A stretch of 64,000 nt of DNA from Octopus sinensis (GCF_006345805.1 NC_042997.1:14446001-14510000), one strand, 5' to 3'; shown: positions 30,246-62,415, counted from the first letter of the stretch. Translations and numbers: made by a program. The notes: generated by a model not told the origin, from the letters alone.

Positions 30246-30297
30246 ACATTATATATATATATATATATAGATATATATATATATATATCTATATATA

Positions 30298-30336
<39 letters not shown>

Positions 30337-30339
<3 letters not shown>

Positions 30340-30914: not shown

Positions 30915-31001
<87 letters not shown>

Positions 31002-36313: not shown

Positions 36314-36365
36314 AGTTACCAGGTGTATACCATACAATTATCTAATATATATATATATATATATA

Positions 36366-38470
36366 GTTCATAATGGAGTCATACTCAATGACTGGCGTAG
36401 CAGCACCATAGTCAACTGCTACAAGGATAAGGGTGATGCTCTAGATAGAAATAACTACAGGGGAATCAAACTGTTGGATCAGGTGATGAAGGTCATAGAG
36501 AGGGTCATAACCCATCTCATTAGGGAGAGGATTTGCTTAGATGAGATGCAGTTCAGTTTTGTGCCGTGTAGAAGCACCACTGATGCTATATTCCTGGTCC
36601 GACAACTGCAGGAGAAGTACCTAGCTAAAGATAAACCCCTCTACATAGCTTTTGTGGACTTGGAGAAAGCCTTTGACAGGGTTCCCCGGTCCCTTATCTG
36701 GTGGTCGATGCGGAAACTGGAGATTGACGAATGGCTAATAAGGGCTGTACAGGCTCTATACAGAGAGGCTGTCAGCAAGGTTAGGATTGGCAACGAATAT
36801 AGTGAAGAATTCCGGGTAGAAGTAGGTGTACACCAAGGCTCAGCCCTCAGTCCCCTTTTATTCATCATAGTCCTCCAGGCAATAACAGAGGAATTCAAAA
36901 CAGGTTGCCCCAGGGAACTCCTCTATGCTGATGACCTGGCTCTCATAGCAGAATCACTACCGGAACTAGAAAAGAAATTTCGGGTGTGGAAACAAGGGTT
37001 AGAATCAAAGGGCCTTAGAGTAAATGTAGCGAAGACCAAAGTTATAGTAAGCAGGAAGGCGAACTCAGCACACACCCCATCGGGCAGGTGGCCCTGCTTG
37101 ATCTGTAGGAAAGGTGTAGGTAGAAACTCCATAAGATGCACCCAGTGTAAGCTATGGACGCATAAGAGGTGCAGCAACATCAAAGGGAAATTAACTGATA
37201 AGATAGCTTTCATGTGCGGCAGATGCACAGGGACAATAGACACCACAAATACTCAGAAAACAGATTCCATCACACTCCAGGGGGAGAAACTAGAAGTAGT
37301 TGATAGTTTCCGCTACCTGGGTGACCAAGTTAGTAGTGGAGGTGGACGCTCAGAGAGTGTCACCACTAGAATACGAATAGCCTGGGCAAAGTTTAGAAAG
37401 CTCCAACCCCTACTGGTGACAAAGGGTCTCTCACTCAGAGTGAAAGGTAGATTGTATGATGCATGTGTGCGAACTGCCATGCTTCACGGCAGTGAAACAT
37501 GGGCAGTGACTGCAGAGGACATGCGTAGACTTGAAAGAAATGAAGCTAGCATGATCCGCTGGATGTGTAATGTCAGTGTGAATGCACGATAGAGTGTAAG
37601 CACCCTGAGAGAAATGCTAGATATAAGAAGCATCAGATGCGGTGTGCAAGAGCGATGCTTGCGATGGTATGGTCATGTACTGCGGATGGATGAGGAGAGA
37701 TGTGTGAAGAAGTGCCGCTCCCAAACAGTTGAAGGAATCAGGGGGAGAGGTAGACCCAGGAAGACATGGGATGAGGTAGTCAAGCATGACCTCAGAGCGT
37801 TGGGCCTCACTGAGGCAATGGCGAAGGACCGAGATCTCTGGAGATGTGCTGTGACAACAAAGACCCGGGATGCTTCCGGCACCAGTTCCGCATAGCCCCT
37901 GCCCATTCAAAGTATCTTGGATCCCAGAACATCTCGCTGTGCTTGAGGAGACCTGTTGAGTCAAGTGCATGTACATGAACATCGAAACAAATATCGATGG
38001 AAATAGTAATTGTGATACCTGTGCCACATAAAAAGCACCATCCGAACGTGGCCGTTGCCAGTGCTGCCTCGACTGGCTTCTGTGCCGCTGGCACATAAAA
38101 AGCACCATCTGAACGTGGCCGATGCCAGCGCCGCCTCGACTGGCTTCTGTGCCGGTGGCACATAAAAAGCACCATCCAAACGTGGCCGATGCCAGCCCCG
38201 CCCTGGCTGGCTTCCATGCCGGTGGCACGTTAAAAGCACTAACCGGGCCGATGCCAGACCCCCCCCCTGGCACCTGTGCAGGTGGCACGTAAAAAGCACC
38301 CACTACACTCTCGGAGTGGTTGGCGTTAGGAAGGGCATCCAGCTGTAGAAACACTGCCAGATCAGACTGGAGCCTGGTGCAGCCCTGGCTTCCCAGACCC
38401 CAGTCGAACCGTCCAACCCGTGCCAGCGCGGAAAACAGACGTTAAACGATGATGATGATGATGATGATGA
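36366..38470 (+). mobile_element. 5'-truncated RTE-like LINE with PHD finger in the RT region; source family of E tails
   Basis: RT motifs FVDLEKAFDRV, GVHQGSALSPLLF, YADDL, FRYLG, LRWYGHVLRM; 3' UTR with 67-bp repeats; (GAT)n tail. Confidence 0.92.
36474..37895 (+). pseudogene. RT-PHD ORF fragment with one in-frame TAG at 37590-37592
   Basis: Track ORFs 36474-37592 and 37614-37895 are in frame (21-nt gap, NAR*SVSTLREML). Confidence 0.9.
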
Positions 38471-42754: not shown

Positions 42755-42859
42755 CTGCAAAATAATGGGAAAAAAAAGTAGTACTTTACTAGATATTTTA
42801 AATATATAAAAACAGGAAACGTTTACATTTAAACAGTTTAAATTTAAAATATATTTACA

Positions 42860-43716: not shown

Positions 43717-44180
43717 AATTCGATGACTGGCACCTGTGCTAGTGGAGCGTTAAGAGTACCATATGAGCATGAGATCGGGGCCAGAGCAACAAGCTGGCCT
43801 CCGTGCCTGTGGCACGTAAAAACACCATTCGAGTGTGATCGTTACCTGTGTAGCCTTACTAGCACTTGTGCTGGTGGCACGTGAAAAAACATCCGAAGGA
43901 GGTCGTTGCCGCTGGACTGGCTCCTGTGCAGGTGGCACATAAAAAGCACCATTTGAGCGTGGCTGTTGCCAGTACCACCTAACTGGCCCTCATGCCGGTG
44001 GCACGTAAAAGCACCCACTACACTCTCAGAGTGGTTGGCGTTAGGAAAGGCATCCAGCTGTAGAAACTCTGCCAGATCAGACTGGAGTTTGGTGCAGCCA
44101 TCTGGTTTGCCAGACCTCAGTCAAATCGTCCAACCCATGCAAGCATGGAAAGCGAACATTAACGATGATGATGATGATGA
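43717..44180 (+). mobile_element. E-family LINE 3' UTR fragment
   Basis: Ends in CCAACCCATGC..(GAT)n like 38300-38470. Confidence 0.8.
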
Positions 44181-44516
44181 TAGCAAGACACCTGCGTTTG
44201 TTCCTTTATCATACTTTTTAACATCTGGCATAAAACCACCTCCATCCCCTTTCAAATATTCCCCAACTTAACCCAGGAGGCTTTTTCTTTTTCTTCTTCT
44301 TGTCTTGTCTTGCAAGTTAATAGGCAACTTCATAAGTGCTAGTGACACAAAAAAAATGCACCCAGTACAATCATTTAATGCCATTCACTGTAAAGGGATT
44401 GACATTAGAAAAGGTACCCAGCTGTAGAGGCCATGCCATAGCCAATGTTGGAGCACAATGCACCCTGGTCAAATCTTCCAGCCCATGCCAGCATAGAACA
44501 TGGATGTTAATTCACC

Positions 44517-44750
44517 TATTTCTTTATTACCCACAAGGGGCTAACACAGAGGGGACAAACAAGGACAGACATAGGTATTAAGTCGATTACATCGACCCCA
44601 GTGCGTAACTGGTACTTAATTTATCGACCCCGAAAGGATGAAAGGCAAAGTCGACCTCGGCGGAATTTGAACTCACAACGTAACGCAGACGAAATACCGC
44701 TAAGCATTTTGCCCAGCATGCTAACGTTTCTGCCAGCTCACCGCCTTTTT
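44517..44750 (-). mobile_element. SINE family C monomer with TSD
   Basis: GATGTTAATTCACC at 44503-44516 and 44757-44770. Confidence 0.88.
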
Positions 44751-44877
44751 TACATAGATGTTAATTCACCACCACCACCACCACCATGATGAGTACAAGG
44801 TTTATAAAGTGAAAGACTTTGCCTTTCATCCTTTCGGGGGTCGATAAATTATGTACCACCTGACTGGGTCTCGTGCT

Positions 44878-45068
44878 GGTGTCATGTAAAAGCACCCACT
44901 ACACTCTCAGAGTGGTTGGTGTTAGGGAGGGCATTCAGCTGTAGAAACTCTGCCAGATTAGACTGGACCCTGGTGCAGCCATCTAGTTTGCCAGACCTCA
45001 GTCAAATCGTCCAACCCATGCTAGCATGGAAAGCAGACGTTAAACGATGATGATGATGATGATGATGA
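44878..45068 (+). mobile_element. E-family fragment
   Basis: Homology to 38290-38470. Confidence 0.8.
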
Positions 45069-45542
45069 TCTCAACAAATATAAGCAGGTATTTGTGTGTG
45101 TATGCATACACATGCAGGCATCAATGTAAGCTTATCATCCCAATTATTGGCCTTATCTTCAGCATCATCACTTTATTTTTTCCCAAGATGGCATGAGTTA
45201 AGCAAATCTACAGTGGAGTAAATCTTGGCTCTATGTTATCACAATAAGGCCTGTTAGGTTCTCAGATACTGACACAATTTTATTCGTTACCTTGCCATGT
45301 ACATAATTTACTGAAGAGTATCACAATATCACAGAATCGACTAGACTATTTGATGTTATACATCACTTGTCTCAATGCAATTCACATCGTTTTAGCTTTC
45401 GAATGATGCCATCCTGTTTGGCTAGGCAAGCTGGCTAATATTCCTCTTGATCAGAAGGCTAGTCCATTGTGGGGTTGCCCATTTACAGCTGAGCAGACTG
45501 GAGAAATATAAAACAAAGTGTTTTCCTCAAGAACATAATTAA

Positions 45543-45775
45543 GGCAGCGAGCTGGCAGAAACATTAGCACGCTGGGCAAAATGCCTAGCGGGATTTCGTC
45601 TGTCTTTACGTTCCTAGTTCAAATTCTGCCGAGGTCGACTTTGTCTTTCATCCTTTCGGGGTTGATAAATTAAGTACCAGTTACACACTGCAGTCGATGT
45701 AATCGACTTAATTCCTTTGTCTGTCCTTGTTTGTCCCCTCTATGTTTAGCTCCCTGTGGGCAATAAAGAAATAAG
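45543..45775 (+). mobile_element. SINE family C monomer
   Basis: Homology to other C copies. Confidence 0.85.
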
Positions 45776-46577
45776 AACATAATCATAATCATCACTATAA
45801 TCATTTAACATAATAAATCCATGCTGGCAAGGGCTGAACAGTTTCACAGGATCCAGCAACCCACAGAGCTACATCAGGCCCCAACATCAGGTTTCACATG
45901 GTTTCTATAATATGTTGATCTTATCACTAACTAACGGTTGTTAGTTGTCGGAGCACTGCATCCTTCAAAACTTCCATGCTTCCTGAGATTCGCCAACACT
46001 ACACCTGATTTTCTCCCCTCCATACACACACAAGCATGTATCTGACTCATACATTGTTCGCTTTCCAGACATTTCTACATTACTGCATGTACTTTATATG
46101 CACTTTCTGACAAGTTGTGGTGCACCTCAGCACTGTATACAATAATTTCATTATTATTATATTATTTACAATGTGTACTTGGTAGTCTTTTCATGAGACC
46201 GAGCACTATTAAGGTCTCCAGGTAATTTGCAAAACAAAGTGAAGAAAAGAAAAGTTAAAAGCCACCTTGATTCAGTGAGTGAAATATACTAACGAAGGTG
46301 ATGATGGCAGTAACACCATGTTCATCACTCAGGTGCAATTGATAAGTTAGTTCAAGAGCTGGACAACTGATCACATGATCATGAGTCCAAGCCTTGCTAT
46401 AGCCACATTGTGTTACACAGCCAGAGGAAGCACATTACATTTACTCTCTTAAATTGAATGGTTAACAATATGAAGAATATAGGAATGTATAAATACTTGC
46501 CCCGATACCCACCACTTTCACATTAGCTATGGATATGAAACAACACAAATATCATTATAATTAATAATTATATAACA

Positions 46578-46950
46578 TCATCATCATCATCGTTTAACGT
46601 CCACTTTCCATGCTAGCATGGGTTGGATGATTTGACTGAAGACTGGCGAACCAGATGGCTGCACTAGGCTCCAATCTTGATCTGGCAGAGTTTCTACAGC
46701 TGGATGCCCTTCCTAATGCCAACCACTCTGGGAGTGTAGTGAGTGCTTTTACGTACCACTGGCATGAGGGCCAGTCAGGCAGTACTGGCAACGGCTACGC
46801 TCAAAGAGTGTTTTTTATGTACCACCTGCACAGGAGCCAGTCCAGTGGTACTGGCAACAACCTCGCTCAAATGCTTTTTCACGTGCAAGTAAGGCAACAC
46901 TGGTAACAATCACGCTTGAACAGTGCTTTTTACATGCCACTGGCATGGAA
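46578..46950 (-). mobile_element. E-family fragment
   Basis: Homology to 43717-44180, inverted. Confidence 0.8.
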
Positions 46951-47134
46951 GCCAAAATTACTATATTATGTCACATGTAAACAAACATAAGTTTGTTTTT
47001 GAAGCATTGAAATGTATTGTAGTATAAGAAGAAAGATATATTTTTCAATGTGTAAATACTGATAAAACAGCATATATAGGATAAAATCCTTTTAGAGCAG
47101 AAAAATTTGTCAGCAACCGCTATTTATACTATAG

Positions 47135-47524
47135 CTAGCAGTATCGCCCGGCGTTGCTCGGGTTTGTTTTGACCCTTTAGAATTGGAGTTTTTGAAAAGT
47201 AAAAATTGTGCATTATGTAGCTTGTTATTCTCTTTAAGTGAACATTTTTCTGGTTGAAATACACCGAAAAATGGCGACACAGCAGTCAAAAAATTGTAAA
47301 AAATAGGGATTTTCATAGAAAAAAAGCACCTTTTTGATGTAAATAATTTTTGGTATTAACATGGTCCGATTTGAATTTTTTCTTCTATGGAAGGAAGAGC
47401 AAGCCTTCTTCTATCATACTATCAAGTTTGGTCAACTTGTGTCGCAGGTCTCGAGGAGATAGTGTTAGTTGAAGGCTACCAAACCTGCCAAACACAGACC
47501 ACTTCAGCTTTATATATAGAGAGA
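47135..47524 (-). mobile_element. non-autonomous Helitron
   Basis: TC start, CCCGAGCAACGCCGGG hairpin, CTAG end; inverted homolog of 48309-48696. Confidence 0.8.
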
Positions 47525-48308
47525 TTACTATATTATAATGAAGTTGCAGGAGTGGGTGTGTTACACTTTGCAACCAAGTGGTTTTGGGTTCAAGTGTAAT
47601 CCAGGCAAGTGCTTTCTACTATAATCTCAGGCTGACCGGTGCTTTGAGTGAACTTGGTTGATGGAATTGTAAAGAACCCATCATAAATGTATTTATGTAT
47701 GCATGTACGTGTGTATGCATGTTCCTCTTGTCTTAGCATATGCATGCTGATTGTAAACAGATTTCTTGTACAACACTATCATTTGTTTGCAATCTTCTGT
47801 GAAAACATGTCTAGCCACTGAGCAGCTGGTCATTGACCTGTTCACCGTTTGAAGGACCAGGGGAAATATTACCTTGCTTGGAAATAAAAGTGAGGGTTGG
47901 TGACAAGCAGAACATCTGGTCATAGAAAAACTGCCTCAACAAGTTTCATCTGATCCATCAAGCATGGAAAAGTGAAAGTTGAAACGATGATGATGACGAG
48001 GAGGATGACGATGATAATGATAATGGTGGTAGTAGTGATGGCGGTGGGTGATTATCTCTGTTGCATGTTTGGAACAGTAGAGTAATGGCCCAAATTATCT
48101 GGCTGTATTCAGTTATCCCCCTTTATAAATTCTGAGTTCAAACTCTGTGTAGGCTAGTTTTGTCTTCCATCCTCCAGCAATAGATAAAATAGTCACCCAT
48201 CAATTACTGATGATCTATATAATCGATGAGATTTACCATCAAATTTCTAGTCTGAAGCCTATGTAAGAAATTATCCTTTCTATTTTTAAAATCTTGTGTT
48301 TATATATA

Positions 48309-48696
48309 TCTCTATATATATAAAGCTGAAGTTGTTTGTGTATGGCAGGTTTAGTAGCCTTCAACTAACACTATCCCCTCCGAGACCCTGCAGCGCAAGT
48401 TGACCAAAATTGAGAGTATGATAGAAGGCTTCCTCTTCCTCCTGTAGAAGAAAAATTCAAATTGGACCATGTTAACACTAAAAATTATAGAAAAAAAAGG
48501 TGCTTTTTTTTCTATGAAATTTCCGATTTTTTACGATTTTTTTTTACTCCTGTGTCGCCATTTTTCGCTGTATTTCAACCAGAAAATTGTCACTTAAAGA
48601 GAATAACAAGCTACATAATGCAAACGTTTTACTTTTCAAAAATTCCAGTTCTAAAGGGTCAAAACAAACCCGAGCAACGCCGGGCGATACTGCTAG
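48309..48696 (+). mobile_element. non-autonomous Helitron
   Basis: A^TC..hairpin..CTAG^T. Confidence 0.82.
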
Positions 48697-49133
48697 TATT
48701 TTATAAAAATGTCACTAGCTATCAAGGTTATCACCAAACTACAACACTGCTTTCAGAATCATACAAAACTTATTACTGTGGTATCCTTTTATATTCATCA
48801 TCATTTTAATATTTTCTTTCACACACTTGCATGGATTAGACAGAGTTTATATATTGAGACAAATTTTCTGCAACTGGACAGCCTTCCTGTCACCAATCCT
48901 TACCCTTTTCTTAGCAATATTTCCCCATGGCCAAGTAATATTTCCCCATGGCCAAACATGTTTTCACAGAATATTGGAAATGACTGGCATTCATTTTCAG
49001 CAATCACATAATGTCAAGACAAGAGGACATAAACATACAAAGACACACACACACACACACATGCGTACACGTGCGTGCACACACATGTACGCGCACATGC
49101 AAAAGCGCATGTATGCACACACACATCAATCAT

Positions 49134-49612
49134 ATCATCATCATCATCGTTTATCATCCGCTTTCCATGCTAGCATGGGGTGGACAATTTGGCTGAGGAC
49201 TGGCGAACCAGAAGGCTGCACCAGGCTCCAATCTGATCTGGCAGAGTTTCTATAGCTGGATGCCCTTCCTAACGCCAACCACTCCGAGAGTGTAGTGGGT
49301 GCTTCTACATGCCACCAGCACAAGAGCCAGTCAGGCGGTGCTGGCAATGGCCATGCTCAAATGTTGCTTTTTATGTACCACTTGCACAGGAGCCAGTCCA
49401 GGGGCACTGGCAACGACCTCGCTCGAATGTTTTTTCACGTGCCACCAGTACAAGTGCTAGTAAGGTAACGCAGGTAACGATCACGCTCAAATGGTGTTTT
49501 TAACATGCCATTAGCATGGAAGCCAGCTTGTTGCTCTGGCTAGGATCCTACTCATATGGTACTCTTAGCGCTCCACTAGCATGGATGCCAGTCATCGAAT
49601 TTGATTTCGATT
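49134..49612 (-). mobile_element. E-family fragment
   Basis: Homology to 43717-44180, inverted. Confidence 0.8.
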
Positions 49613-50204
49613 GGACTATATGTACAAAAATCTTTTTTCGATTTCATTCAACCAAAATCTACTTGTAAGGCTTCAGCCAGCTCAGAGTTGAATGTATAAA
49701 ACACTTGCCCAAGGTACCACACAATGGAATTAAACCTGATACTTTGTGATTGGGAAGCAAACTTCTCACCACACAGCCACACCAGCACCTACCTTATATT
49801 TTCATATTATTTTACTGCTTTCAGACATTAGACTCTGACCATGCCAAGAAATTGTCTTTAATAGTGTTGGTTGATTGCATCAACTACATTACTCTGTCTG
49901 GGATTTATTTTATCAACCTTCTGATGTAGAACAACCAAGTCAGCCTGGATATAATAGGACATAACCAATACAGAACATAATATCTACATCCAATGCGCTT
50001 CTATGCAGTTTTCACTTACTAAATTTCCCTTTGACTTAAATAGAAGGCATTAACACAGTTAGTGTGAATATAGAACCTTATGGTTGTAGAGCAAACTTCT
50101 TAACTATCATTCCATGTGGTCAGTATATATATTTTGCTGCAAGACAATCTTTCAAATATCATCACTAAATTGTTACTGTTATCATTAATATTCTTTTCTA
50201 CTCT

Positions 50205-50405
50205 AGGTACAAAGCCCGAAATTTTGGAGGAGGGAGCCACTCGATTAGATTAACCCCAGTATACAACTGGTACTTAATTTATCGACCCCAAAAGGATGAA
50301 AGGCAAAGTCAACCTCGGCAGAATTTGAACTCAGAACATAGCGGCAGACGAAATACCGCTAAGCATTTCACCCGGCGTGCTAACGATTCTGCCAACTTGC
50401 CACTT
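50205..50405 (-). mobile_element. SINE family C (alternative tail)
   Basis: Homology to other C copies. Confidence 0.78.
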
Positions 50406-50646
50406 TGTTGTCATTAATATTCACTATATTAACCTGCTCAAGATCATCCCCATAATACAATCATTTTAAAGTGATCTAAATTAGCACCGTCCATAAAAAT
50501 TTTGTATTAATGAATGTTCCAAAAACCAACTCAGTAATGGCAAAGTGATTTTACTGAATTCTTTACTGTTTTCTAATTGAAACAAAAGCTGTGCATTTCA
50601 ACAGAAATATATTAGCAAAAGAGTTAAATTAAAAATGCAAACTTAC

Positions 50647-51562
50647 TTGGCATCTGTAGGGCTGCTAATACAGCTTCTTCACCTTTTGAAGAAATTTCAT
50701 TGATTAAAAAATCTGAAAGTTGTTGTAGCTTTCTCCCTGTAATTGCAATCATCAATGACAATTTTGCAAAACAAGAGTCTGTATCACATATATTCTGAGA
50801 AATATTATTATCTTTCAGAGCAGCAAGAGGGCCAAGAATATCTTTTAACCTACTGTTCACTTTCAGAAGTCTTGTAAGATCATAATTATTTTTTATCATT
50901 AAATCAAGCTCTTCTTCAAAAACTCTACCAATTTCTTCATTAGTAATTAAGGAATCACAAGCCTCAGTTCGTGTTAATCCTTCTTCACAGACACTTTTTG
51001 ATTCTTTCCTTGAACAGTTTTCCTTACTAAAATTATTCCCTTTTGAAATCCAGTTATTTTTAGTAATCCTTGAGTTTTTGTAACTGAAAGGTTCTTCAAA
51101 ATCATTTAAGATTGGTCTTTGATATTTCTTACTCCTATCTCTTTCGCCATATGATGTTTTAAGACCTCTAAAATCAGTAGTGCCACAAAACGAACTGTGG
51201 AACTTTTTCTCAGTTCCAGGTCTGCCATTTTCCAAATTATCCATAATTTGCTTGGTTTCTCTTTGAATAACATGATTAATATTTGTCCTTTTAGGAGAGA
51301 AACCAGAACTTTTGTTTCCATCATTCTTGAAATTGCGGTTTTCTCCATAATTTTTAGAATATAGAGTATGAGGATTTTTATATTCTTTTCCTCCTATATA
51401 ACCATTACATTTGTTCATAGGATTAGGTCTTAAGTGAAGATTTTTAGAACTTAAAAATTCATTTTTTGAGGTGGAATTTCCCCAAGAATAATTCTTACTG
51501 AATTTCCAGTTCTTCAACTCAAAACTCTTCTCACTCAGTTTAGCCATAATCCAAACCCACAT
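50647..51562 (-). CDS. upstream coding exon of the same gene (K/N/S-rich region plus helical domain)
   Basis: 916-nt open frame; acceptor TTTTGCAG|ATG at 51563; donor CCAA|GTAAGT at 50646, phase 1, matching the downstream exon (A+CC = Thr). Confidence 0.78.
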
Positions 51563-52241
51563 CTGCAAAAGTAAAATAATATAATAATAAATAAAATTGT
51601 TTTGAAAAATGATTTTTGATATTATTAACTTTTATTCAAAATATTAGATTTAATGATATTCTGAAACATGTCGGAATAATTTTTTCCTTCTAGAAACTAA
51701 TAAATGATGTATAACTAAATATATTTTAATATCATCATTATCATTTGATACCTGTTTTACATGCTGGCATGGGTTGGATGGTTTGACAGGAACTGGCAAG
51801 CCAGAGAGCTGGACCAAGCTTCAATTGTCTGTTTCAGCATGGTTTTTACAGATGGGTGTCCTTCTAATGCTAACCACTTTACAAAGTATTCTGGGTGCTT
51901 TTTATGTAGCACCAGCACAGGAGCTTTTACATGACACTAACACTGGTCCGTTTTACATGACACCAGCATGGGTGCTTTTTACATGGTGTCAGAATGGGTG
52001 CTTTTTACGTGGTGCCAGAATGGGTGCTTTTTATGTGGTGCAAGTACAGATGTTTCTTACATGGCATCAGCACAGGTACTTTTACATGGATATTCTATTA
52101 TATAGTTGCACAACTATATATTTAGAGATGCACACACTCATTGACATCAATTTGCTGAGTACAATGGTAAAATGTTATCACATCTACTTCTATTTGCATT
52201 CTCCAAAATTCTATTCTAGGAACCCTTTAATTTATTATGCA

Positions 52242-52640
52242 CTAGCAGTATCACCTGGCGTTGCTTGGGTTTGTAAGGGAAATAACTATATAAGCATTTT
52301 TAGAGAGTTATAGCCAAAAAAATAGCAAAAAAATGCATTAAAAATGGGGAAAAAATGATGGTAAATTTTTTTTTAAATCGTTGACTCATCGTAGACATTT
52401 TTAGAGAGTTACTTCCCTTATATAATAGCGAAAAATTGCATTAAAATGGAAAAAAATGATGGTAAATTATTTTTAAAATCGTAGACTCATCGTAGACGCG
52501 TGCTAATACCCAGAAGGGCTCGATATGAATCACGACTATAAGATACCCGCTTTTGGTTAAACTGCACCGCAAAATGTGGGAGTAGTTAGGAATCTAAATC
52601 GTAGGAGACAGACACCCAACTTCACTTTTATATATAAAGA
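52242..52640 (-). mobile_element. non-autonomous Helitron
   Basis: Same subfamily as 58194-58587 and 59565-59954. Confidence 0.8.
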
Positions 52641-52685
52641 TATGGATAGCATATCTTAAGCCTCAAAATTATTTACTTTTAATCT

Positions 52686-53097
52686 TATTTCTTTACTGCC
52701 CACAAGGGGCTACACAGAGAGGGGACAAACAAGGACAGATAAACAGATAAAGTCGATTATATCGACCCCAGTGCGTAACTGGTACTTAATTTATCGACCC
52801 CGAAAGGATGAAAGGCAAAGTCAACCTTGGCGGAATTTGAACTCAGAATGTAACAGCAGACGAAATACCTATTTCTTTACTACCCACAAGGGGCTAAACA
52901 CAGAGAGGACAAACAAGAACAGGCAAACGGATTAAGTCGATTATAACGACTCCAGTGCGTAACGGGTACTTATTTAATCGACCCCGAAAGGATGAAAGGC
53001 AAAGTCGACCTCGGTGGAATTTGAACTCAGAACATAACGGCAGACGAAAGACGGCTATGCATTTTGCCCGGCGTACTAACGATTCTGCCAGCTCGCC
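52686..53097 (-). mobile_element. SINE family C dimer
   Basis: Two bodies joined at GAAATA|GGTATTTCGTC. Confidence 0.85.
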
Positions 53098-53124
53098 AAC
53101 ATGTTCTATATCATGATGGTAGTG

Positions 53125-53955
53125 GTGGTGGTGGTGGTGGCGGCGGCCTATACCAGGTGTGTAGCCAGCCCACTTATGTGTACCTTTCTTCCATTTGCTT
53201 GTGAAAACCTGTTGAGGCAAGTGAAACCGAAATCAAATTTGATGACTGGCATCCGTGCTAGTGGACCGCTAAGAGCACCATCCAAACATGATCGTTGCCA
53301 GAGCGGCTAACTGGCTTCCGTGCCGGTGGCGCATAAAAAGTACCATTCGAGCGTGATCAATACCTATTTCTTTATTACCCACAAGGGGCTAAACACAGAG
53401 GGGACAAACAAGGACAGACATAGGTATTAAGTCGATTATATCGACCCCAGTGTGTAACTGGTACTTAATTTATCGACCCCGAAAGGATGAAAGGCAAAGT
53501 CGACCTCGGCGGAATTTGAACTCACAACGTAACGCAGACGAAATACCGCTAAGCATTTCGCCCGGCGTGCTAACGTTTCTGCCAGCTCGCTGCCTCAGCG
53601 TGATCAATACCAGCAGCACCTTACTAGCACTTAGGCCAGTGGCATGTGAAAAAACATTCGAGTGAGGTCGTTGCCAGTGCCACTGGACTGGCTCCTGTGC
53701 AGGTGGCACGTAAAAAACACCATTTGAGCATGGCCATTGCCAGTACCGCCTGACTGGCCCTCGTGCCAGTGGCACATAAAAGCACCCACTACATTCTCGG
53801 AGTGGTTGGCGTTAGGAAGGGCATCCAGCTGTAGAAACTCTGCCAGATCAAGATTTGAGCCTGGTGCAGCCATCTGGTTCACTAGTCCTCAGTCAAATCG
53901 TCCAACCCATGCTAGCATGGAAAGCAGACGTTAAACAAAGATGATGATGATGATG
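53125..53955 (+). mobile_element. E-family fragment interrupted by a SINE C monomer (53365-53596, minus)
   Basis: 15-bp TSD AGCGTGATCAATACC at 53350-53364 and 53597-53611. Confidence 0.88.
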
Positions 53956-54718
53956 TCCCTGAAATATTCAGGAAATCTATAAAAGATAATAACCATCCAA
54001 ATTGCACACAAAAGACTTCAAGACAGAAAGCATTGCTTCCAACTTGTTCATTGAACTTTTAATACTTGTTATCTGCAGATGCATTTATCACTTCTATTGT
54101 ATTGGTATTTTTTTTGTCAGGTTATTCTTATTGTTATTGATAACATGTAATTCAGTACAACCTGCTGCAAAAATCGGGCACTGGTGTAGCTTGAATGAGT
54201 GCAGCTTGGAGTGGCCCTTCAGTTGGCCACCCCAACAAAATGTACATATTGCTTATAGCAGACACAAAAGTGGTGCCACCCCCATAAAAGTGCCACCCAG
54301 AACAGACCGCTTTTCTGCTCCCCACTAGCTATGCTAGTGCAGTCAGGTGTTGGCGATCAAACTAATTATTCTACTAAGACAGCTTTGTAAGGAGGGTGGT
54401 TTCCACAGGACACCCCTGCAGGATAAAAAACAAAACCTACCGATGGCCATCCATCAGCCGAGAGTGAGTGACCCCTAGCCTTTATTTAGACATCTCTCAT
54501 GAATGAAAACTCTGATGTAACACCTGTGACTTTGTTTGCATCCAATGATGTTGAGTAGTTCTAACTGGGCAAGTACATTCTTGATTTGAGCAGTGGTTCT
54601 CAACTAGGGTCCATAGGGCCCTGGAGGTCCATATAATATTTTATTGTCAAAATATATGTGCAATAAATTGGTTATACTTCTACAATACATTAAATAAAGC
54701 TATGATTATATAAGGAAA

Positions 54719-54872
54719 TTCTGTTGTGTCTGGGGAAAGTAATTTTCTTTTTGTGCCTTATAATGTAACACACTCACTGGTAAAATTTCCACTTTTTTCT
54801 TATTTTTATTTTCCTAAAATTTTCGTTACATTTTAAGGCACAAAAAGAAAATGACTCCCCAGACACAACAGA
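54719..54872. repeat. foldback repeat, about 50-bp arms
   Basis: TTCTGTTGTGTCTGGGG..ATGTAAC and its near-exact reverse complement at about 54824-54872. Confidence 0.8.
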
Positions 54873-55036
54873 ATATGCTTCAACACACGAACTCATATAA
54901 AGAATCTTGCAAACCAAATCCAAAAAACGAAATATATAAGGAAAGCCTAATACCAATACTCAGGGTTAGACAACAAAAAAAAGAGGTTTATTTCACAAAC
55001 TTTTTAATAATCTCGATTACAACAATATACGTTTAA

Positions 55037-55257
55037 CCCTTTAGCATTTAAACCGGCCATATCCGGCCAAAAGTATTCTGCTTGTTTTATGTTAAAACTG
55101 GCCAGATGTGGTCTCTCACACCAACCCTACAATATCATTTTAAAAATTAACAGCTACTGCATCAAAATCTCATAGCTACAAGATAATGCATGATTAGTTC
55201 AAAACAATGTGAATGAAAAAGCATTAATTTTAGCAGAATAATGCGAACACTAAAGGG
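55037..55257. mobile_element. piggyBac-type MITE
   Basis: TTAA|CCCTTTAG ... CTAAAGGG|TTAA (TTAA TSD, CCC/GGG ends). Confidence 0.7.
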
Positions 55258-56212
55258 TTAAGAAACAATGTTAAATAAGTCCTTTGTTTAACTGAATGTG
55301 TATGCCAAAGTACACACGCGAGATGCAAGAAATATTTATCAGTAAGAGCACATTGAACTTTGCATCTCAAAAACTGCATTGTTTTTAAGTTTATTAGTGC
55401 AAACTAATTTACTTCTTATGCATACATCAACTGTCTCCTTATACCATACCTCAATAAAAAAAGGAATAACTGAAAAAGACATGAATTCCGCAAACTGCAG
55501 TATATACCACCCATCATGGAGAGAGTCATGAAGGAAAGCCAAAACAAAATATAAGAAACCCTTTAGTGTTGGTGTAGAAAATCTTAATGGCTGATGGCTC
55601 AATGAAAGGCATCCAGTTCATGCTGTGAATGAGTTGGTTACTTGGTTACCTTGTCGGTGCTGTTGCCATGTAAAAAGCATCCTGTACACTCTGTAAAGTG
55701 GTTGGCATTAAGAAAGGCATCCAGCCATAGAAACCATACCAAAACAGACACTGGAGCCTGGTGCAGCTTCCAACTTTACTAACTCCTATCAAACCGTCCA
55801 ATCCATACCAGCATGGAAAACAGACCATTATTGCCTTTTGTATTTCATTTTTGTATTTTGGATTTCATTATTGTTTTTTGTATTTTATATTCGTGTGGCA
55901 TCGTCCGTTTTTCTGTCCCTATTTCGTATACATTCGATCCTTCTTCCGAGAAATCTAATGCTCGTAGCTTAGTTTTTCCTTGGGGCTGGCCAGATCGGAG
56001 CGATCTCAAGATTAATCAGCCGAAATTGCTACGATGATCCGGTTCTTGACTGAAGATTGAGGGCTTCGAATGTCCCGTCCATGTTTTTTGTATCGTCTTC
56101 TAAGTGTTTTGCGTTCTTGTCCCAGTTTGTATTTTTCTACATATAATAATAATAATAATATATATATATATATATATATACTTTATTTAAAAGCAGCATA
56201 AATTTTAAAAAG

Positions 56213-56250
56213 CTGTTACTCGGAGTTTCACGTTCCCGTTTGTCGGACAG
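56213..56250 (-). ncRNA. decayed minimal hammerhead
   Basis: CTGT-CCGACAA-ACG-GGAA-CGT-GAAA-CTCCGAG-TA-ACAG. Confidence 0.55.
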
Positions 56251-56335
56251 TTTTGTTAAAATAGTTTTGTTACTCTACCTCAGGTATTTGAGTACTCTTT
56301 TTTCCACCTTGTTTCACATTTATGTGTTTACTCCG

Positions 56336-56366
<31 letters not shown>

Positions 56367-56874
56367 CTATGGTGGGCACAGTGGTGTAGCCAGTTGCTGC
56401 AACCATGGGCAAAGAAAGCACACCAGCCCAGCATTGGCAATGTGTTTGCCCAAACTGCTGACATTGGCATCCGTCAGTCTATGGTGGACAGAAGGACTGT
56501 AGACCTGTTTGTCAACAACATGCTACTGCTGCATTTAGAGGAGTTCCCCACCAAGATCAGCTGAACCCTAGCAAGATGCCGATGTCTTGCCGCACTCTGG
56601 CCAGTTCTATATGGGAACCGGTGTTAAGGAAGGATAGGAAAATATTAGACTTATAAGCCCTAAACTTCACTCAATAATTGCCCACGGGTATAGTAGTAAA
56701 GAGCGCAGGCTACTAACCCCAAGATTCCAAGTTCAATTCCATGCAGTGACCTGAACAACAACAACATTTGTTTCTTTCGCTGTCGCTAAAAAAAGTTCAT
56801 ATTCCATGAATTCGTTTTTCGTATCTCATGTTTTCGTTTTTTAATATTGTTTACATTTTGTGAGATCCTGTGCC

Positions 56875-57380
56875 CACATATGCATGCCCATTCAAAGTAC
56901 CTTGGATTCCAGAACATCCCGCTGTGCTTGAGGAGACCTATTGAGTCAAGTACATGAACATCGAAATAAATATCAATGGAAATAGTAGTTGTGATACCTA
57001 TGCAGGTGGCACATAAAAAGCACCATCCGAACGTGGCCGATGCCAGCGCCGCCTCAACTGGCTTCTGTGCCGGTGGCACATAAAAAGCACCATCCAAATG
57101 TGACCGATGCCAGCACTGCCTTGGCTGGCTTCTGTGCCAGTGGCACATTAAAAGCACCAACCGATCGTGGCCGATGCCAGACTCCCCTGGCACCTGTGCC
57201 GGTGGCACGTAAAAAGCACCCACTACACTCGCGGAGTGGTTGGTGTTAGGAAGGGCATCCAGCTGTAGAAACACTGCCAGATCAGACTGGAGCCTGGTGC
57301 AGCCCCTGGCTTCCCAGACCCCGGTCGAACCGTCCAACCCATGCTAGCACGGAAAACAGACGTTAAACGATGACGATGAT
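56875..57380 (+). mobile_element. E-family LINE 3' UTR copy with 67-bp repeats
   Basis: Colinear with 37900-38470. Confidence 0.85.
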
Positions 57381-57540
57381 ATATATATATATATGCACAC
57401 ATACATATGTATATATACATATCACCGTGATCACTGTGACCGACCAGGCTATCAGATGTTGCTACACATCGCTGGTCACAATGCGCTTCGTATTGTTTTA
57501 GCCTTCAAATGATGCCACCCCGCTGGCTAAGCGAGCAGGC

Positions 57541-57575
<35 letters not shown>

Positions 57576-57576
57576 T

Positions 57577-57608
<32 letters not shown>

Positions 57609-57676
57609 ATGTTAAATAAAGCGAGACAAAAGCCAAGGCTGCATGGAATTTTCAGGGCATTTATAAGAGAGAGTTA

Positions 57677-57723
57677 GTCTTACAGCTATTTCTGGGATAT
57701 TAGGATATCCCTTCATCAGAGAC
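57677..57723 (-). ncRNA. type I hammerhead ribozyme, near intact
   Basis: GTCT-CTGATGA-A-GGGATAT-CCTA-ATATCCC-A-GAAA-TAGCTG-TA-AGAC. Confidence 0.72.
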
Positions 57724-57794
57724 AATGTGACATGGTTAAATGGAGGGAAATATTAGAGTTCAATATAAGGAGTTATTTGGGAAAAGGAAGGAAA

Positions 57795-58193
<399 letters not shown>

Positions 58194-58587
58194 CTAGCAA
58201 TATCGCCCGGCGTTGCTCGGGTTTGTAAGGGAATAACTATATAAGCATTTTTAGAGATGTAAAGTATAATAGCCATCTCAATATGGCTAACCACAAAGGG
58301 GAGGTGTTACTGTAGCTTTTTACGTTCTGAGATTTAATAATACATTTTTAGAGAGTTACTTCTCTTATATAATAGCAAAAAATGCATTAAAAATGGGGGA
58401 AAATGATGGTAATTTTTTTTTTAAATCGTAGATTCATCGTAGACGTGGGCTAATACCCAGAAGGGCTCGATATGAATCACGACTATAAGATACTCGCTTT
58501 TGGTTACACTGCACCGCAAAATGTGGGAGTAGTTAGGAATCTAAATCGTAGGAGACACACACACAACTTCACTTTTATATATAAAGA
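58194..58587 (-). mobile_element. non-autonomous Helitron
   Basis: TC..hairpin..CTAG termini. Confidence 0.8.
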
Positions 58588-58669
58588 TATATATATATAT
58601 ATACATAAGAGTAATCACATAAATGTGAAACAAGGTGGGGAAAATAGTACTCAAATACAGGAAGTAGAG

Positions 58670-58821
58670 TAATATGCTTTATTAATAAAGCTGCGAAGAT
58701 AAAAACTTACTCAGTTTCATGTTCTTGATTGTCAGACAGTTTTGGTTACAGTCTAATGAACAGGAGCATGAAACTCTGAGTAACAGTTTTTGTGATGTCT
58801 TTGCAGCTTTATTAATAAAGT

Positions 58822-58822
<1 letters not shown>
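58670..58822. repeat. inverted pair of decayed hammerheads (58703-58740 minus, 58748-58788 plus)
   Basis: CTGT-CTGACAA..GAAA-CTGAG-TA and CTAATGA..GAAA-CTCTGAG-TA-ACAG; arms end in GCTTTATTAATAAAG. Confidence 0.6.
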
Positions 58823-58857
<35 letters not shown>

Positions 58858-59564
58858 TACATATATATAATATATATACATATACATATATATGTATTTC
58901 TTTCCTTTCCTGAGCGTCCAATAACACTATACTTGTTCCACATCCTTGCGTTGTTGTGTTTTCTCTTTGTTCATGTTTGGATTAACTATATATACAACAT
59001 ACATACACACATATATACATACATACAAAAATACATACGTACATACATACATACATACATGCATGCATACATACATATCATCCTCATCATCATTTAACAT
59101 CCATTTCTCAATGCTAGCATGAGTTAGACAGTTTGACAGGATCCATTGAGCTGCAAGGCTTTCCCAAGCATTGATGTCAGCTTTGGCATGGCTTCTATGG
59201 AGACGGAGCCCTTCCTAATGCCCATCATTTTACAGTGTCTACTGGATGCTTTTTGCGTGTATGTGTGTGTGTGTGTGTGTGTGCATGTGTGTACCACCAG
59301 TACTACTGAAGTTGACAAGTAACTTGCAAGACAGAAAAGAACAGAGAAAAACCGAAAGGAAAAAGCTCCGACTACTAAGTGTGTGTGTGTGTGTGTGGTG
59401 TGTGTGTGTGTGTGTGTGAGTATGTACATGTGTGAAGTGAGTAGTATTTGAAAGGAGGTAGCTTATGTCAGGTATTGAAAAAGCATGTACATAATCGTTA
59501 ACTTTTATGTGTTTTCCATAGTCTTTGCTTCTAGGGATACAAATCATTAACTTATCAAATGATA

Positions 59565-59954
59565 TCTTCATATATAAAAGTGAGGTTGTGTACTGTCTGT
59601 CTCCTACGATTTAGATTCCTAACTACTCCCACATTTTGCGGTGCAGTTTAACCAAAACTGGGTATCTTATAGTCATGATTCATATCAAGCCCTTATGGGT
59701 ATTAGCGCACGTCTACGATGAGTCTACGATTTAAAAAAAAAATTACCATCATTTTTTTCCATTTTAATGCATTTTTTCGCTATTATATAAGGGAAGTAAC
59801 TCTCTAAAAATGTCTACGATGAGTCAACGATTTTTAAAAAAATTTACCATAATTTTTTTTCCATTTTTTTGCTATTTTTTGGCTATAACTCTCTAAAAAT
59901 GCTTATATAGTTATTTCCCTTACAAACCCGAGCAACGCCAGGAGATACTGCTAG
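59565..59954 (+). mobile_element. non-autonomous Helitron
   Basis: A^TC..hairpin..CTAG^T; inverted homolog of 58194-58587. Confidence 0.8.
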
Positions 59955-60375
59955 TACAACATATTAAGTAAATCCAAAGATTGTGACATGAACTTCTGAT
60001 ACTGAATGAACATCACGTTCTTCTTGATGGGACTAAAAAAAGAGTATTAATTTGAACTAGAATTAGAATCATTAAAATAACATGAGCTGATCTGTTATCT
60101 TTTATTTCTTACTTGTTTCATTTGTCAGACTGTGGCCATGCTGAAGCACTGCATTGAGGAATTTCAGTCACATGAATCTACCCCAGTACTTTTTTTTTTT
60201 GTTAAGCCTGGCACGTATTCTGTCCATCACTTTTGTTGAACCGCTGAGTAACAGGGTTGTAAACAAACCAGTACCAGTTGTCGTGCTTACATGTGTTAGA
60301 CGGAATTCATTTTGGTTGATTTTTTTCCACAGCTGGATGCCTTTCCAGTTGCCAACCTTCACCTGTTTCTAGGTT

Positions 60376-60757
60376 ACTCTTTTTACTCTTTTATTTGTTT
60401 CAGTCATTTGACTGAGGCCATGCTGGAGCACTGCCTTTAGTCGAGCAAATCGACCCCAGGACTTATTCTTTGTAAGCCTAGTACTTATTCTATCAGTATC
60501 TTTTGCCGAACCGCTAAGTTACGGGGACGTAAGCACACCATCATCGGTTGTCAAGTGATGTTGGGGGGATAAACACACACATATATACATACAAACGACA
60601 GGCTTCTTTCAGTCTCCGTCTACCAAATCCACTCACAAGGCTTTGGTCAGCCTGAGGCTATAGAAGACATTTGCCCAAGGTGCCACGCAGTGGGACTGAA
60701 CCCGGAACCATGTGTTTGGTAAGCAAGCTACTTACCACATAGTCACTCCCGCGCCTA
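60376..60757 (-). mobile_element. SINE family D
   Basis: Homology to other D copies. Confidence 0.82.
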
Positions 60758-60777
60758 TGTTAGGAAATATTTCCCAC

Positions 60778-61035
60778 AGCCGGTGGCACGTAAAATGCAC
60801 CAATCCGACCGTGGCCGATGCCAGCCTCGCCTGGCACCAGTGCAGGTGGCACGTAAAAAGCACCCACTACACTCACGGAGTGGTTGGCGTTAGGAAGGGC
60901 ATCCAGCTGTAGAAACATTGCCAGATAAGACCGGAGCCTGGTGCAGCCCAGATCCCCGGTCGAACCGTCCAACCCATGCTAGCATGCTAGCATGGAGAAC
61001 GGACGTTAAACGATGATGATGATGATGATGATGAT
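60778..61035 (+). mobile_element. E-family fragment
   Basis: Homology to the E tail; (GAT)n end. Confidence 0.8.
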
Positions 61036-62127: not shown

Positions 62128-62415
62128 TTTGAGCGAGGTTGTTGCCAGTGCCACTGGACTGGCTCCTGTGCAGGTGGCACATAAAAAACACCATTTGAGC
62201 ATGGTCGTTGCCAGTACTGCCTGACTGGCCCTTGTGCCAGTGGCACGTAAAAGCACCCACTACACTCTCGTTGTGGTTGGCATTAGAAAGGACATCCAGC
62301 TGTAGAAACTATGCCAGATCAGATTGGAGCCTGGTGCAGCCATCTGGTTTGCCAGTCCTCAGTCAAATCATCCAACCCATGCTAGCATGGAAAGCAGACA
62401 TTAAATGATGATGAT
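62128..62415 (+). mobile_element. E-family fragment
   Basis: Homology to the E tail. Confidence 0.8.

What the first reader, a model, noticed from the sequence alone, without database searches (positions are those of the whole stretch)
37095..37226. C4HC3 PHD finger inserted inside the reverse transcriptase of an RTE-like LINE
Seen: C-x2-C-x10-C-x2-C-x4-H-x2-C-x14-C-x2-C with the PHD-typical WxH (CLIC..CTQCKLWTHKRC..CGRC) sits between the KTKV and FRYLG motifs. The spacing is about 93 aa, versus about 32 aa in the BovB element at 7-10 kb. Established: PHD fingers read histone H3 tails and are known in ORF1 of CR1/L2 elements. Inference: a chromatin reader fused to the RT thumb region could steer integration. 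Consistent with that, E-tail copies of this family are concentrated right of 36 kb (over a dozen, versus about one left of 33 kb), in the putative gene body.
Basis: partly seen in the sequence, partly recalled or inferred. Interest (0 to 1): 0.8.

Follow-up and report, generated by a model that had tools for sequence, protein, structure and literature searches.

The report
PHD finger inside a LINE polymerase
A dead octopus jumping-gene copy carries a small zinc-binding "chromatin reader" domain inside its reverse transcriptase; thousands of relatives from jellyfish-like animals to lancelets share it, I found no paper describing it, and its function is untested.

Summary
Window 37095-37226 (+) encodes a C4HC3 motif that is the only such match in all six frames. 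It reaches the Pfam PHD cut-off when scanned alone, and its model's 50 closest solved structures are all PHD fingers, Pygopus best.

It lies between the GLxVNxxKTK and FxYLG motifs (RT motifs 6 and 7). That is a palm loop about 40 residues before the thumb, not the thumb itself.

The host element (36367-38460) is a dead copy: 5'-truncated, with one in-frame stop. It belongs to an RTE-like LINE family with an AP endonuclease. All 120 best relatives carry the insert, from Cnidaria, Mollusca and Cephalochordata. The eight zinc ligands are invariant in a 115-sequence alignment. A finger-only profile finds 4,288 protein clusters.

In R2 cryo-EM structures the loop called motif 6a, which I take to be this same site, wedges into target DNA. 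My best reading is an essential target-engagement module whose ligand is undecided between the histone H3 tail and nucleic acid.

The 13-to-1 skew of tail copies is real, and several lie in or beside a predicted host gene. It is one post-hoc locus and says nothing about the finger.

Ten literature searches found PHD fingers only in ORF1 or at the ORF2 N-terminus of CR1/L2 elements.

The parts
36367..38470 (+). 5'-truncated, dead copy of the PHD-bearing RTE-like LINE: RT from motif 0, C-terminal domain, 3'UTR and terminal (GAT)n
   Evidence: tblastn with P0014 residues 201-694 gives 52% identity, E 1e-171. The copy is flanked by (TA)n on both sides (36345-36365 and 38470-38486), which is consistent with a target-site duplication in a TA microsatellite.
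36369..37589 (+). Open part of the RT reading frame, 407 codons, containing the PHD insert
   Evidence: Pfam RVT_1 E 1.6e-28. AlphaFold model has mean pLDDT 83.8. Best Foldseek matches are R2 and LINE-1 ORF2p.
36924..36935 (+). YADD catalytic motif of the RT (motif 5)
   Evidence: D188 is invariant and D189 nearly invariant in alignment A1.
37029..37043 (+). AKTKV, the end of RT motif 6 and upstream border of the insert
   Evidence: K222 invariant. This segment aligns with GYKINVQKS of human LINE-1 ORF2p.
37095..37226 (+). C4HC3 PHD finger core, C243 to C286 of the translated fragment
37308..37322 (+). FRYLG, RT motif 7 (primer grip) and downstream border of the insert
   Evidence: Y316 invariant. 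It lies in strand 313-316 of the model.
37590..37592 (+). In-frame TAG stop that breaks the ORF
37593..37895 (+). Remainder of the ORF in the same frame, including the terminal stop codon at 37893-37895. It holds the C-terminal domain with the RGRGRPRKTW ... DRDLWR motif.
   Evidence: The motif is shared with relatives P0003, P0014 and P0335 and, in weaker form, with the RTE-type LINE at 7.4 kb.
38021..38300 (+). Tandem repeat of a 67-bp unit, 4.3 copies, in the 3'UTR
38448..38470 (+). Terminal (GAT)n microsatellite of the element
   Evidence: The same repeat ends most of the other tail copies.
43794..62415 (.). Thirteen tail-only copies, 50-496 bp, on both strands: 43794-44176, 44873-45058, 46579-46954, 49136-49527, 51731-51924, 53244-53355, 53635-53949, 55657-55825, 56885-57380, 60779-61024, 61216-61265, 61274-61344 and 62127-62415
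   Evidence: The copies at 43794 and 49136 share an unrelated 5' sequence, so they are a non-autonomous element that uses this tail.
1853..2036 (-). The single tail copy in the left half of the window

Best explanation
The locus is a fossil. It is a 5'-truncated copy, broken by one stop codon, of an RTE-like LINE that has an AP endonuclease. Nothing functions here now.

The family's reverse transcriptase carries a roughly 60-residue module in the loop between RT motifs 6 and 7. The module is a two-zinc PHD finger of the Pygopus-like kind on two poorly conserved linkers. This much is shown.

The finger appears to be an obligatory part of the enzyme. This is inferred from conservation as strict as that of the catalytic core across at least three animal phyla.

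Its likely role is inferred by position. In R2 cryo-EM structures the RT loop called motif 6a protrudes into the target DNA upstream of the nick. I equate that loop with this site from its name and my own knowledge; it was not checked by alignment. A finger there would help hold the polymerase on its target during target-primed reverse transcription.

My split on the ligand is about 45% the N-terminal tail of histone H3 on a target nucleosome, about 40% DNA or RNA directly, and the rest another protein or a purely structural role.
For: Identity as a PHD finger:
- The pattern is unique in the window.
- Pfam PHD scores 27.2 bits on the isolated segment, and 28.1 and 28.5 bits in relatives P0014 and P0003.
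- A profile of the finger matches Pygopus PHD chains at E 2e-7, then PHF23, KDM5B, PHF13, PHF2, ALFIN-like, BPTF and TAF3.
- The model of the finger alone has mean pLDDT 77. Its 50 best Foldseek matches in the PDB are all PHD fingers, with TM 0.5-0.7 and rmsd mostly 2-3 A.

Position:
- The family profile aligns with human LINE-1 ORF2p up to residue 766, just before KYLGI, and stops where the finger begins.
- In the model, strands 219-228 precede the finger. Strands 300-322 and the thumb helices from 327 follow it.

Selection:
- All 120 best relatives have the insert.
- C243, C246, C257, C260, H265, C268, C283 and C286 are invariant in 115 sequences, and W263 is present in 114.
- Mean column conservation is 0.69 for the finger, 0.76 for the RT core, 0.66 for the thumb and about 0.5 for the two linkers.

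Breadth:
- 3,828 proteins match at E<=1e-10.
- The finger-only profile finds 4,288 clusters at 50% identity.
- Named sources are Hydractinia, Mercenaria, Dreissena, Elysia, Branchiostoma and Octopus.

Element type:
- L002 holds both halves of an AP endonuclease, then the RT with the finger, then the C-terminal motif. P0335 gives the same order.
- A relative's N-terminus matches the endonuclease of the in-window RTE-type LINE by BLASTP at E 8e-12.

Role at the target:
- Motif 6a of R2 contacts and wedges into upstream target DNA (PMC11204384, PMC12180492).

For a histone ligand:
- The counterparts of human Pygo1 Y341, V350, A356, I357, W366 and L382 line its K4me, T3 and A1 pockets (PMC2726290). 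They are among the best conserved finger residues here: an aromatic at 241 in 100 of 115 sequences, V250 in 106, Ser or Ala at 254 in 112, I255 in 113, W263 in 114 and L275 in 110.
Against: - No binding experiment exists, and the model coordinates could not be inspected. The zinc geometry and the finger's orientation relative to the active site are therefore unknown.
- Foldseek E-values for the small domain are weak (0.017 or higher).

Against a histone ligand:
- The Pygo loop carrying D352 is two residues shorter and has no acidic residue. The counterparts of E360 and Y379 are not conserved (PMC2726290).
- Aligned to PHF13, two positions are Gly/Val and Ser instead of Phe and Met. I recall these as PHF13's methyl-lysine cage residues; that rests on my own knowledge, not a tool result.
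- The finger core is strongly basic, with mean net charge +5.8 and a conserved HKK/HKR. The Pygo histone face is acidic.

Against a DNA ligand:
- None of the nearest solved relatives is described primarily as a DNA binder.

On position:
- R2 is a distant LINE with a different endonuclease. Transfer of the motif-6a role is by position only.
Confidence: 0.6

Rival explanations
1. The finger is a nucleic-acid clamp, not a histone reader. It would be an enlarged version of the motif-6a wedge that grips target DNA or the template/primer duplex next to the primer grip.
For: It sits in the loop I equate with the R2 loop that inserts into target DNA (PMC12180492, PMC11204384). The core is strongly basic, with a conserved HKK/HKR. 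The acidic residues that Pygo uses for the H3 tail are missing (PMC2726290).
Against: The closest sequence and fold relatives are nearly all histone H3-tail readers, most reading methylated K4 and some the unmodified tail. The residues lining their peptide groove are the ones conserved here. Net positive charge also occurs in the H3K4me3 reader PHF13, by my count from the alignment.
Confidence: 0.3
2. One reading: the finger reads a chromatin mark and steers insertions into gene bodies. The clustering of tail copies right of 36 kb would be the trace of this.
For: Thirteen of 14 extra tail copies lie at 43.8-62.4 kb. By my own binomial arithmetic this is about 2e-4 under a uniform model, chosen post hoc. 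A predicted host gene has exons at 41214-42755 and 50645-51589 on the minus strand, and four copies lie in its intron. (TA)n sites are densest at 20-32 kb, where there is no tail copy at all, so the availability of such sites does not explain the skew.
Against: This is one 64-kb locus examined after the fact. The copies span 72-91% identity, so they come from many events over a long time. Some belong to a non-autonomous element. The region at 20-32 kb is mostly microsatellite. There was no comparison with a LINE family that lacks the finger. The element's own copy lies outside the mapped exons and inside a TA microsatellite, which points to sequence preference.
Confidence: 0.15
3. The finger is a protein-protein adaptor or a regulatory or folding module. 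Examples would be recruiting a host factor, as Pygo PHD binds BCL9, or stabilising the palm. It would have no direct contact with chromatin or nucleic acid.
For: Pygo-type PHD fingers use their rear face to bind a partner domain (PMC2726290). PHD folds are versatile.
Against: There is no evidence for any partner. The conserved surface residues map to the histone-groove side rather than to the loop-2 and beta-5 side that Pygo uses for BCL9.
Confidence: 0.1

Closest known systems
PHD fingers of CR1/L2-type LINEs (Kapitonov and Jurka 2003; Metcalfe and Casane 2014, PMC4120745; PMC3708506)
   Same: A PHD finger is encoded by an AP-endonuclease LINE. Those authors likewise suggest a role in targeting the host genome, and no functional study exists.
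   Different: There the finger is a separate domain in ORF1 or at the N-terminus of ORF2, upstream of the endonuclease, in the Jockey superfamily. Here it is nested inside the RT catalytic domain of an RTE-like element. PMC4120745 describes ORF2 architecture as highly constrained.
Pygopus PHD finger (PDB 2vpe, 2vpg, 4up0; PMC2726290)
   Same: It is the best sequence and fold match. Shared features are the YPCG(I/V)C start, the (I/L)xC strand, the KW(V/F)H motif, and the counterparts of Y341, V350, A356, I357, W366 and L382.
   Different: The Pygo loop (EVNDDQD) is replaced by the shorter GVGxNS with no Asp. E360 and Y379 have no counterpart. The finger is basic rather than acidic. The BCL9-binding surface was not examined.
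RT motif 6a of R2 retrotransposons (PMC12180492, PMC11204384)
   Same: By my reading it has the same topological position, between RT motifs 6 and 7. In R2 it protrudes into upstream target DNA during target-primed reverse transcription.
   Different: In R2 it is a short loop, not a folded zinc domain. R2 uses a restriction-like endonuclease and N-terminal zinc-finger and Myb domains for site specificity.
RTE-2_OV, the octopus RTE-clade LINE (PMC9115989); a near-intact relative lies at window 7384-10749
   Same: Same genus of host and same overall plan of endonuclease, RT and short C-terminal domain. It is collinear with the PHD family at 25% identity over about 700 residues.
   Different: It has no insert between motifs 6 and 7 (about 31 residues against 92). 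It carries a C-terminal C2H2-type finger instead.

Membership tests
PHD finger (Pfam PF00628) | C4HC3 ligand pattern with canonical spacing | tested here: met
   C-x2-C-x10-C-x2-C-x4-H-x2-C-x14-C-x2-C at 37095-37226. The pattern is kept in 114 of 120 relatives. The other six have decayed or slightly respaced versions.
PHD finger (Pfam PF00628) | Profile score at or above the curated cut-off of 24 bits | tested here: met
   27.2 bits on the isolated segment and 21.4 bits within the whole translation. Relatives P0014 and P0003 score 28.1 and 28.5 bits. Competing models C1_1, C1_2 and RING all fall below their cut-offs.
PHD finger (Pfam PF00628) | Interleaved two-zinc (cross-brace) fold | tested here: met
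   AlphaFold model, pLDDT 77. All 50 best PDB neighbours are PHD fingers, with TM 0.5-0.7. This rests on a model: coordinates could not be inspected and E-values are weak.
PHD finger (Pfam PF00628) | Conserved Trp two residues before the His ligand | tested here: met
   W263, present in 114 of 115 sequences.
PHD finger (Pfam PF00628) | Binds the histone H3 N-terminal tail. This is typical of the family but not universal. | not testable with these tools
   Residue mapping onto Pygo1 is mixed: six pocket residues are kept and three are lost (PMC2726290).
Pygopus-type PHD subfamily | EVND 'Pygo loop' with D352, and the invariant E360 | tested here: not met
   The loop is two residues shorter (GVGxNS). 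Position 258 is Ser, Gly, Thr or Asn. It resembles Pygo but is not a member.
RTE-group LINE | AP endonuclease N-terminal to the RT in one ORF | tested here: met
   Absent from the window copy because of 5' truncation. Present in relatives: L002 gives Exo_endo_phos over profile positions 1-210 of 225, E 4.6e-4, 20.5 bits, below the cut-off of 24.5. P0335 shows the same order. BLASTP to the in-window endonuclease gives E 8e-12.
RTE-group LINE | No RNase H and no CCHC knuckle after the RT; short C-terminal domain | tested here: met
   Pfam finds only RVT_1 and PHD in P0003, P0014, P0116 and P0335. The C-terminus carries the GRPxKTW ... DRxxWR motif.
RTE-group LINE | 3' end made of short tandem repeats | tested here: met
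   (GAT)n ends the element and most tail copies.
RTE-group LINE | RT groups with RTE, RTEX or Proto2 references in a phylogeny | not tested
   No reference set (Repbase or Dfam) was available. The only evidence is collinear similarity to the in-window RTE-type element (E 3e-56). The exact clade name is open.
RTE-group LINE | No separate ORF1 | tested here: inconclusive
   In L002 about 110 residues precede the endonuclease in the same ORF, and no upstream ORF is evident. That copy is decayed.
CR1/L2-type PHD-bearing LINEs | PHD in ORF1 or at the N-terminus of ORF2 | tested here: not met
   Here the finger is between RT motifs 6 and 7.

The most novel reading that the evidence does not exclude
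This LINE family has a histone-tail reader built into the DNA-contacting loop of its reverse transcriptase. The choice of insertion site would then be set partly by chromatin state, for example methylated H3K4 in active genes. It would be a non-LTR counterpart of the chromodomain integrases of chromoviruses, conserved since before bilaterians.
Probability: 0.2. Interest if true: 0.8.

Novelty: new variant of a known kind. Interest (0 to 1): 0.5.

Why it matters
LINE ORF2 proteins are regarded as architecturally constrained, and accessory domains are expected at the ends or in ORF1. A folded reader-type domain nested in the RT palm, at the loop that touches target DNA in R2, is a natural experiment in coupling reverse transcription to target recognition. 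It is conserved across phyla and present in thousands of clusters.

If the finger binds histone tails, it gives a direct and testable route to chromatin-guided LINE integration. That is also relevant to current efforts to engineer non-LTR retrotransposons for gene insertion. If it binds DNA, it shows how the motif-6a contact can be elaborated.

In either case the family is abundant in molluscs, cnidarians and lancelets. It provides many sequences for reconstruction.

Tried and rejected
- Literature: ten full-text searches combining PHD with RTE, RTEX, RTE-X, Proto2, ORF2, RVT_1, RT domain and non-LTR found no description of a PHD finger inside a LINE RT. Most hits were 'PhD' in acknowledgements. 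Kapitonov and Jurka 2003 is not held.
- The C1 (phorbol-ester) domain and RING were considered. Pfam C1_1 and C1_2 score 18-22 bits, below their cut-offs, and cover half the motif. RING gives E 0.16. All structural neighbours are PHD fingers. Both were rejected.
- Chance occurrence was rejected: no match in 60 shuffles, and the ligands are invariant in relatives.
- A host gene exon or exapted domain was rejected. The frame is continuous with the RT, and the top 150 hits to the finger-only profile look like LINE RT fragments on inspection. A strict motif pattern confirmed only 38 of 71 upstream flanks and 44 of 78 downstream flanks that could be tested.
- The search for the endonuclease first failed. 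The P0014 contig is another 5'-truncated copy, and P0126 alone gave no Pfam hit. It was resolved with L002.
- No tRNA-derived heads of the tail copies were found.
- Availability of TA microsatellites as the explanation of the tail-copy skew was rejected. The TA-rich 20-32 kb stretch has no copies.
- The orientation of the finger relative to the active site could not be read, because model coordinates and predicted aligned error are not exposed.

Full report
**1. What is in the window**

Bases 36367-38470 (+) are one copy of a LINE.
- The reading frame opens right after a (TA)n run at 36345-36365 and runs for 407 codons (36369-37589).
- It is broken by a single in-frame TAG at 37590-37592 and continues in the same frame to a stop at 37893-37895.
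- A 3'UTR follows, with a 67-bp unit repeated 4.3 times (38021-38300). Then come a terminal (GAT)n and another (AT)n run.
- The (TA)n on both sides is consistent with a target-site duplication inside a TA microsatellite.
- The translation starts at RT motif 0, so the endonuclease and the linker are missing.
- The copy is therefore 5'-truncated and dead.

**2. The observation**

The C4HC3 pattern is encoded at exactly 37095-37226.
- It is the only match in six frames, and 60 shuffles of the window gave none.
- Pfam PHD scores 27.2 bits (E 3.9e-6, cut-off 24) on the isolated segment and 21.4 bits in the whole translation.
- C1 and RING models score lower and stay below their cut-offs.
- The motif lies between AKTKV and FRYLG, 92 residues apart. 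The corresponding distance in the other LINE of the window is about 31 residues.

**3. Is it a PHD finger?**

- By sequence, the segment's best PDB matches are the PHD fingers of PHF13, PHF23, SHPRH, KDM5B, MLL and BPTF.
- A 47-sequence profile of the finger (A2) matches Pygopus PHD chains best (E about 2e-7). PHF23, KDM5B, PHF13, PHF2, ALFIN-like 3, BPTF, BRD1 and TAF3 follow.
- A model of the finger alone has mean pLDDT 77. Its 50 nearest PDB structures are all canonical PHD fingers, with TM 0.5-0.7 and rmsd mostly 2-3 A. Foldseek E-values are only 0.017 or higher, as is usual for such small domains.

**4. Where it sits**

- The 407-residue model has mean pLDDT 83.8 and pTM 0.74. It matches R2 and LINE-1 ORF2p structures best.
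- The finger (about 241-288, pLDDT 81-89) is flanked by two low-confidence, poorly conserved linkers (229-240 and 289-305).
- The strand after motif 6 (219-228) precedes it. The strands carrying FRYLG (300-322) follow it. The helical thumb begins at 327.
- The family profile aligns with human ORF2p up to residue 766, just before KYLGI, and breaks off where the finger begins.
- The insert is thus in the palm loop between motifs 6 and 7, not in the thumb.
- From the nomenclature, which I know but did not test, this is the 'motif 6a' region of LINE RTs.
- In cryo-EM structures of Bombyx, zebra finch and turtle R2, that loop contacts and wedges into target DNA upstream of the nick (PMC11204384, PMC12180492, PMC12247875).

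**5. The family**

- A search with the 407-residue fragment found 3,828 proteins at E<=1e-10.
- Most of the 120 listed have RVT_1 plus PHD precomputed.
- All 120 carry the insert. 114 have the exact pattern, and six are decayed or respaced.
- Named sources are Hydractinia symbiolongicarpus, Mercenaria mercenaria, Dreissena polymorpha, Elysia chlorotica, Branchiostoma belcheri, Octopus bimaculoides and O. vulgaris.
- In a 115-sequence alignment the eight zinc ligands are invariant, like the first catalytic Asp. W263 is present in 114 sequences.
- Mean column conservation is 0.69 for the finger, 0.76 for the RT core, 0.66 for motif 7 plus thumb, and about 0.5 for the linkers.
- The finger-only profile finds 4,288 representative clusters at E<=1e-3 and 1,033 at E<=1e-10. 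On inspection the top 150 look like LINE fragments, although a strict motif pattern confirmed only about half of the flanks that could be tested.
- Upstream of the RT, relatives carry an AP endonuclease. L002 shows both halves, then the RT, the finger and the C-terminal GRPKKTW motif. P0335 shows the same order. The endonuclease part matches that of the in-window RTE-type LINE.
- No RNase H or CCHC knuckle is present, and the 3' end is a simple repeat.
- This is RTE-group architecture. The precise clade (RTE, RTEX or Proto2) was not tested, because no reference set was available.

**6. What the finger may bind**

I mapped the family onto human Pygo1 using the published pocket residues (PMC2726290).

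Conserved counterparts:
- Y341: an aromatic at 241 in 100 of 115 sequences.
- V350: V250.
- A356: Ser or Ala at 254.
- I357: I255.
- W366: W263.
- L382: L275.

Not conserved:
- D352 lies in a loop that is two residues shorter here and has no acidic residue.
- E360 has no counterpart.
- Y379 has no counterpart.

Other points:
- Aligned to PHF13, two positions are Gly/Val and Ser instead of Phe and Met. I recall these as PHF13's methyl-lysine cage residues (my own knowledge).
- The finger core is basic, with mean net charge +5.8 and a conserved HKK/HKR. The Pygo histone face is acidic.
- PHF13's PHD is also net positive by my count, so charge alone does not decide the matter.

I therefore leave the ligand open between the H3 tail (about 45%) and nucleic acid (about 40%).

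**7. The integration-bias argument**

- The tail (37866-38460) has 14 further matches: one at 1853-2036 and 13 between 43.8 and 62.4 kb, on both strands.
- Their identity to the reference tail is 72-91%. Most end in (GAT)n.
- Two (43794 and 49136) share a different 5' sequence, so they belong to a non-autonomous element that borrows this tail.
- A 524-codon ORF at 41214-42785 (-) has a dsRBD domain. It is 99% identical to an 853-residue hypothetical protein of Octopus vulgaris.
- That protein maps to 41214-42755 and 50645-51589 on the minus strand. Its first 34 residues are not in the window.
- There is therefore a predicted gene to the right of 41 kb. Four copies lie in its 7.9-kb intron, and the others lie towards its 5' side.
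- The PHD-bearing copy itself lies about 2.7 kb beyond the stop codon.
- TA microsatellites are densest at 20-32 kb, where there are no tail copies. Availability of such sites does not explain the skew.
- The skew is real, about 2e-4 under a uniform model by my own arithmetic. It is post hoc, from one locus, and spans many ages.
- Short retroposons accumulate around genes for many reasons. It is no evidence about the finger.

**8. What is known**

PHD fingers in LINEs are documented in ORF1 and at the N-terminus of ORF2 of CR1, L2 and Crack elements. PMC4120745 proposes a targeting role for them and notes that no functional study exists. PMC3708506 reports the same placement. That paper also calls ORF2 architecture highly constrained. 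None of ten searches found a description of a PHD finger nested in the RT. The combination is, however, plainly visible in precomputed Pfam annotations of thousands of database proteins. Specialist repeat libraries could not be consulted.

**9. Verdict**

The locus itself is an ordinary dead copy. The family-level architecture is a widespread and apparently undescribed variant of PHD-bearing LINEs, and worth a bench test.

Noticed in passing
window 7384-10749 (-): An almost intact RTE-type LINE. It is a 1,122-codon frame (AP endonuclease, RT, C-terminal C2H2-like finger HFCPTCARGFLARIGLTSHLRSH) interrupted by a single in-frame stop at 9913-9915 (..HWHLID*VIVRAK..). It fits the published description of RTE-2_OV, the LINE reported as expressed in octopus brain (PMC9115989).
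   Followed up: partly
window 41214-42755 and 50645-51589 (-): Two exons of a predicted host gene. They are 99% and 97% identical to residues 340-853 and 26-340 of an uncharacterised Octopus vulgaris protein with one dsRNA-binding motif (P0390). The window is therefore from O. vulgaris or a very close relative. Residues 1-34 are not in the window.
   Followed up: partly
window 38021-38300 (+): A 67-bp unit repeated 4.3 times (83% matches) in the LINE's 3'UTR. The number of units varies among the tail copies elsewhere in the window.
   Followed up: no
window 43734-43793 and 49528-49587: Two tail copies are preceded by the same unrelated sequence (..gctagtggagcg(t/c)taagagtaccatatgag..). This indicates a non-autonomous element that shares the LINE's 3' tail. 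ARAGORN found no tRNA-like head.
   Followed up: partly
window 20000-32000: A long stretch dominated by (TA)n and (CATA)n-type microsatellites, with GC down to 0.26. It has 66 runs of (TA) of six or more units in 12 kb and no copy of the LINE tail.
   Followed up: no
window 28963-29181 (-) and 31797-32015 (-): Two short RT fragments of other LINE families. They are 27-38% identical to the two families studied.
   Followed up: no
proteins P0048 and P0002 (database relatives): P0048 is an O. bimaculoides gene model that fuses a fragment of this LINE, including the finger, to a LETM1-like domain. It is probably a prediction artefact. P0002 is 71% identical to the window protein but is labelled as a Herbaspirillum metagenome-assembled genome protein. 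It is probably animal DNA in a bacterial bin.
   Followed up: no
precomputed annotations of relatives: Many family members carry a hit to Pfam PF27108 next to PHD. That family is newer than the Pfam copy available here, so I could not find out what it is.
   Followed up: no
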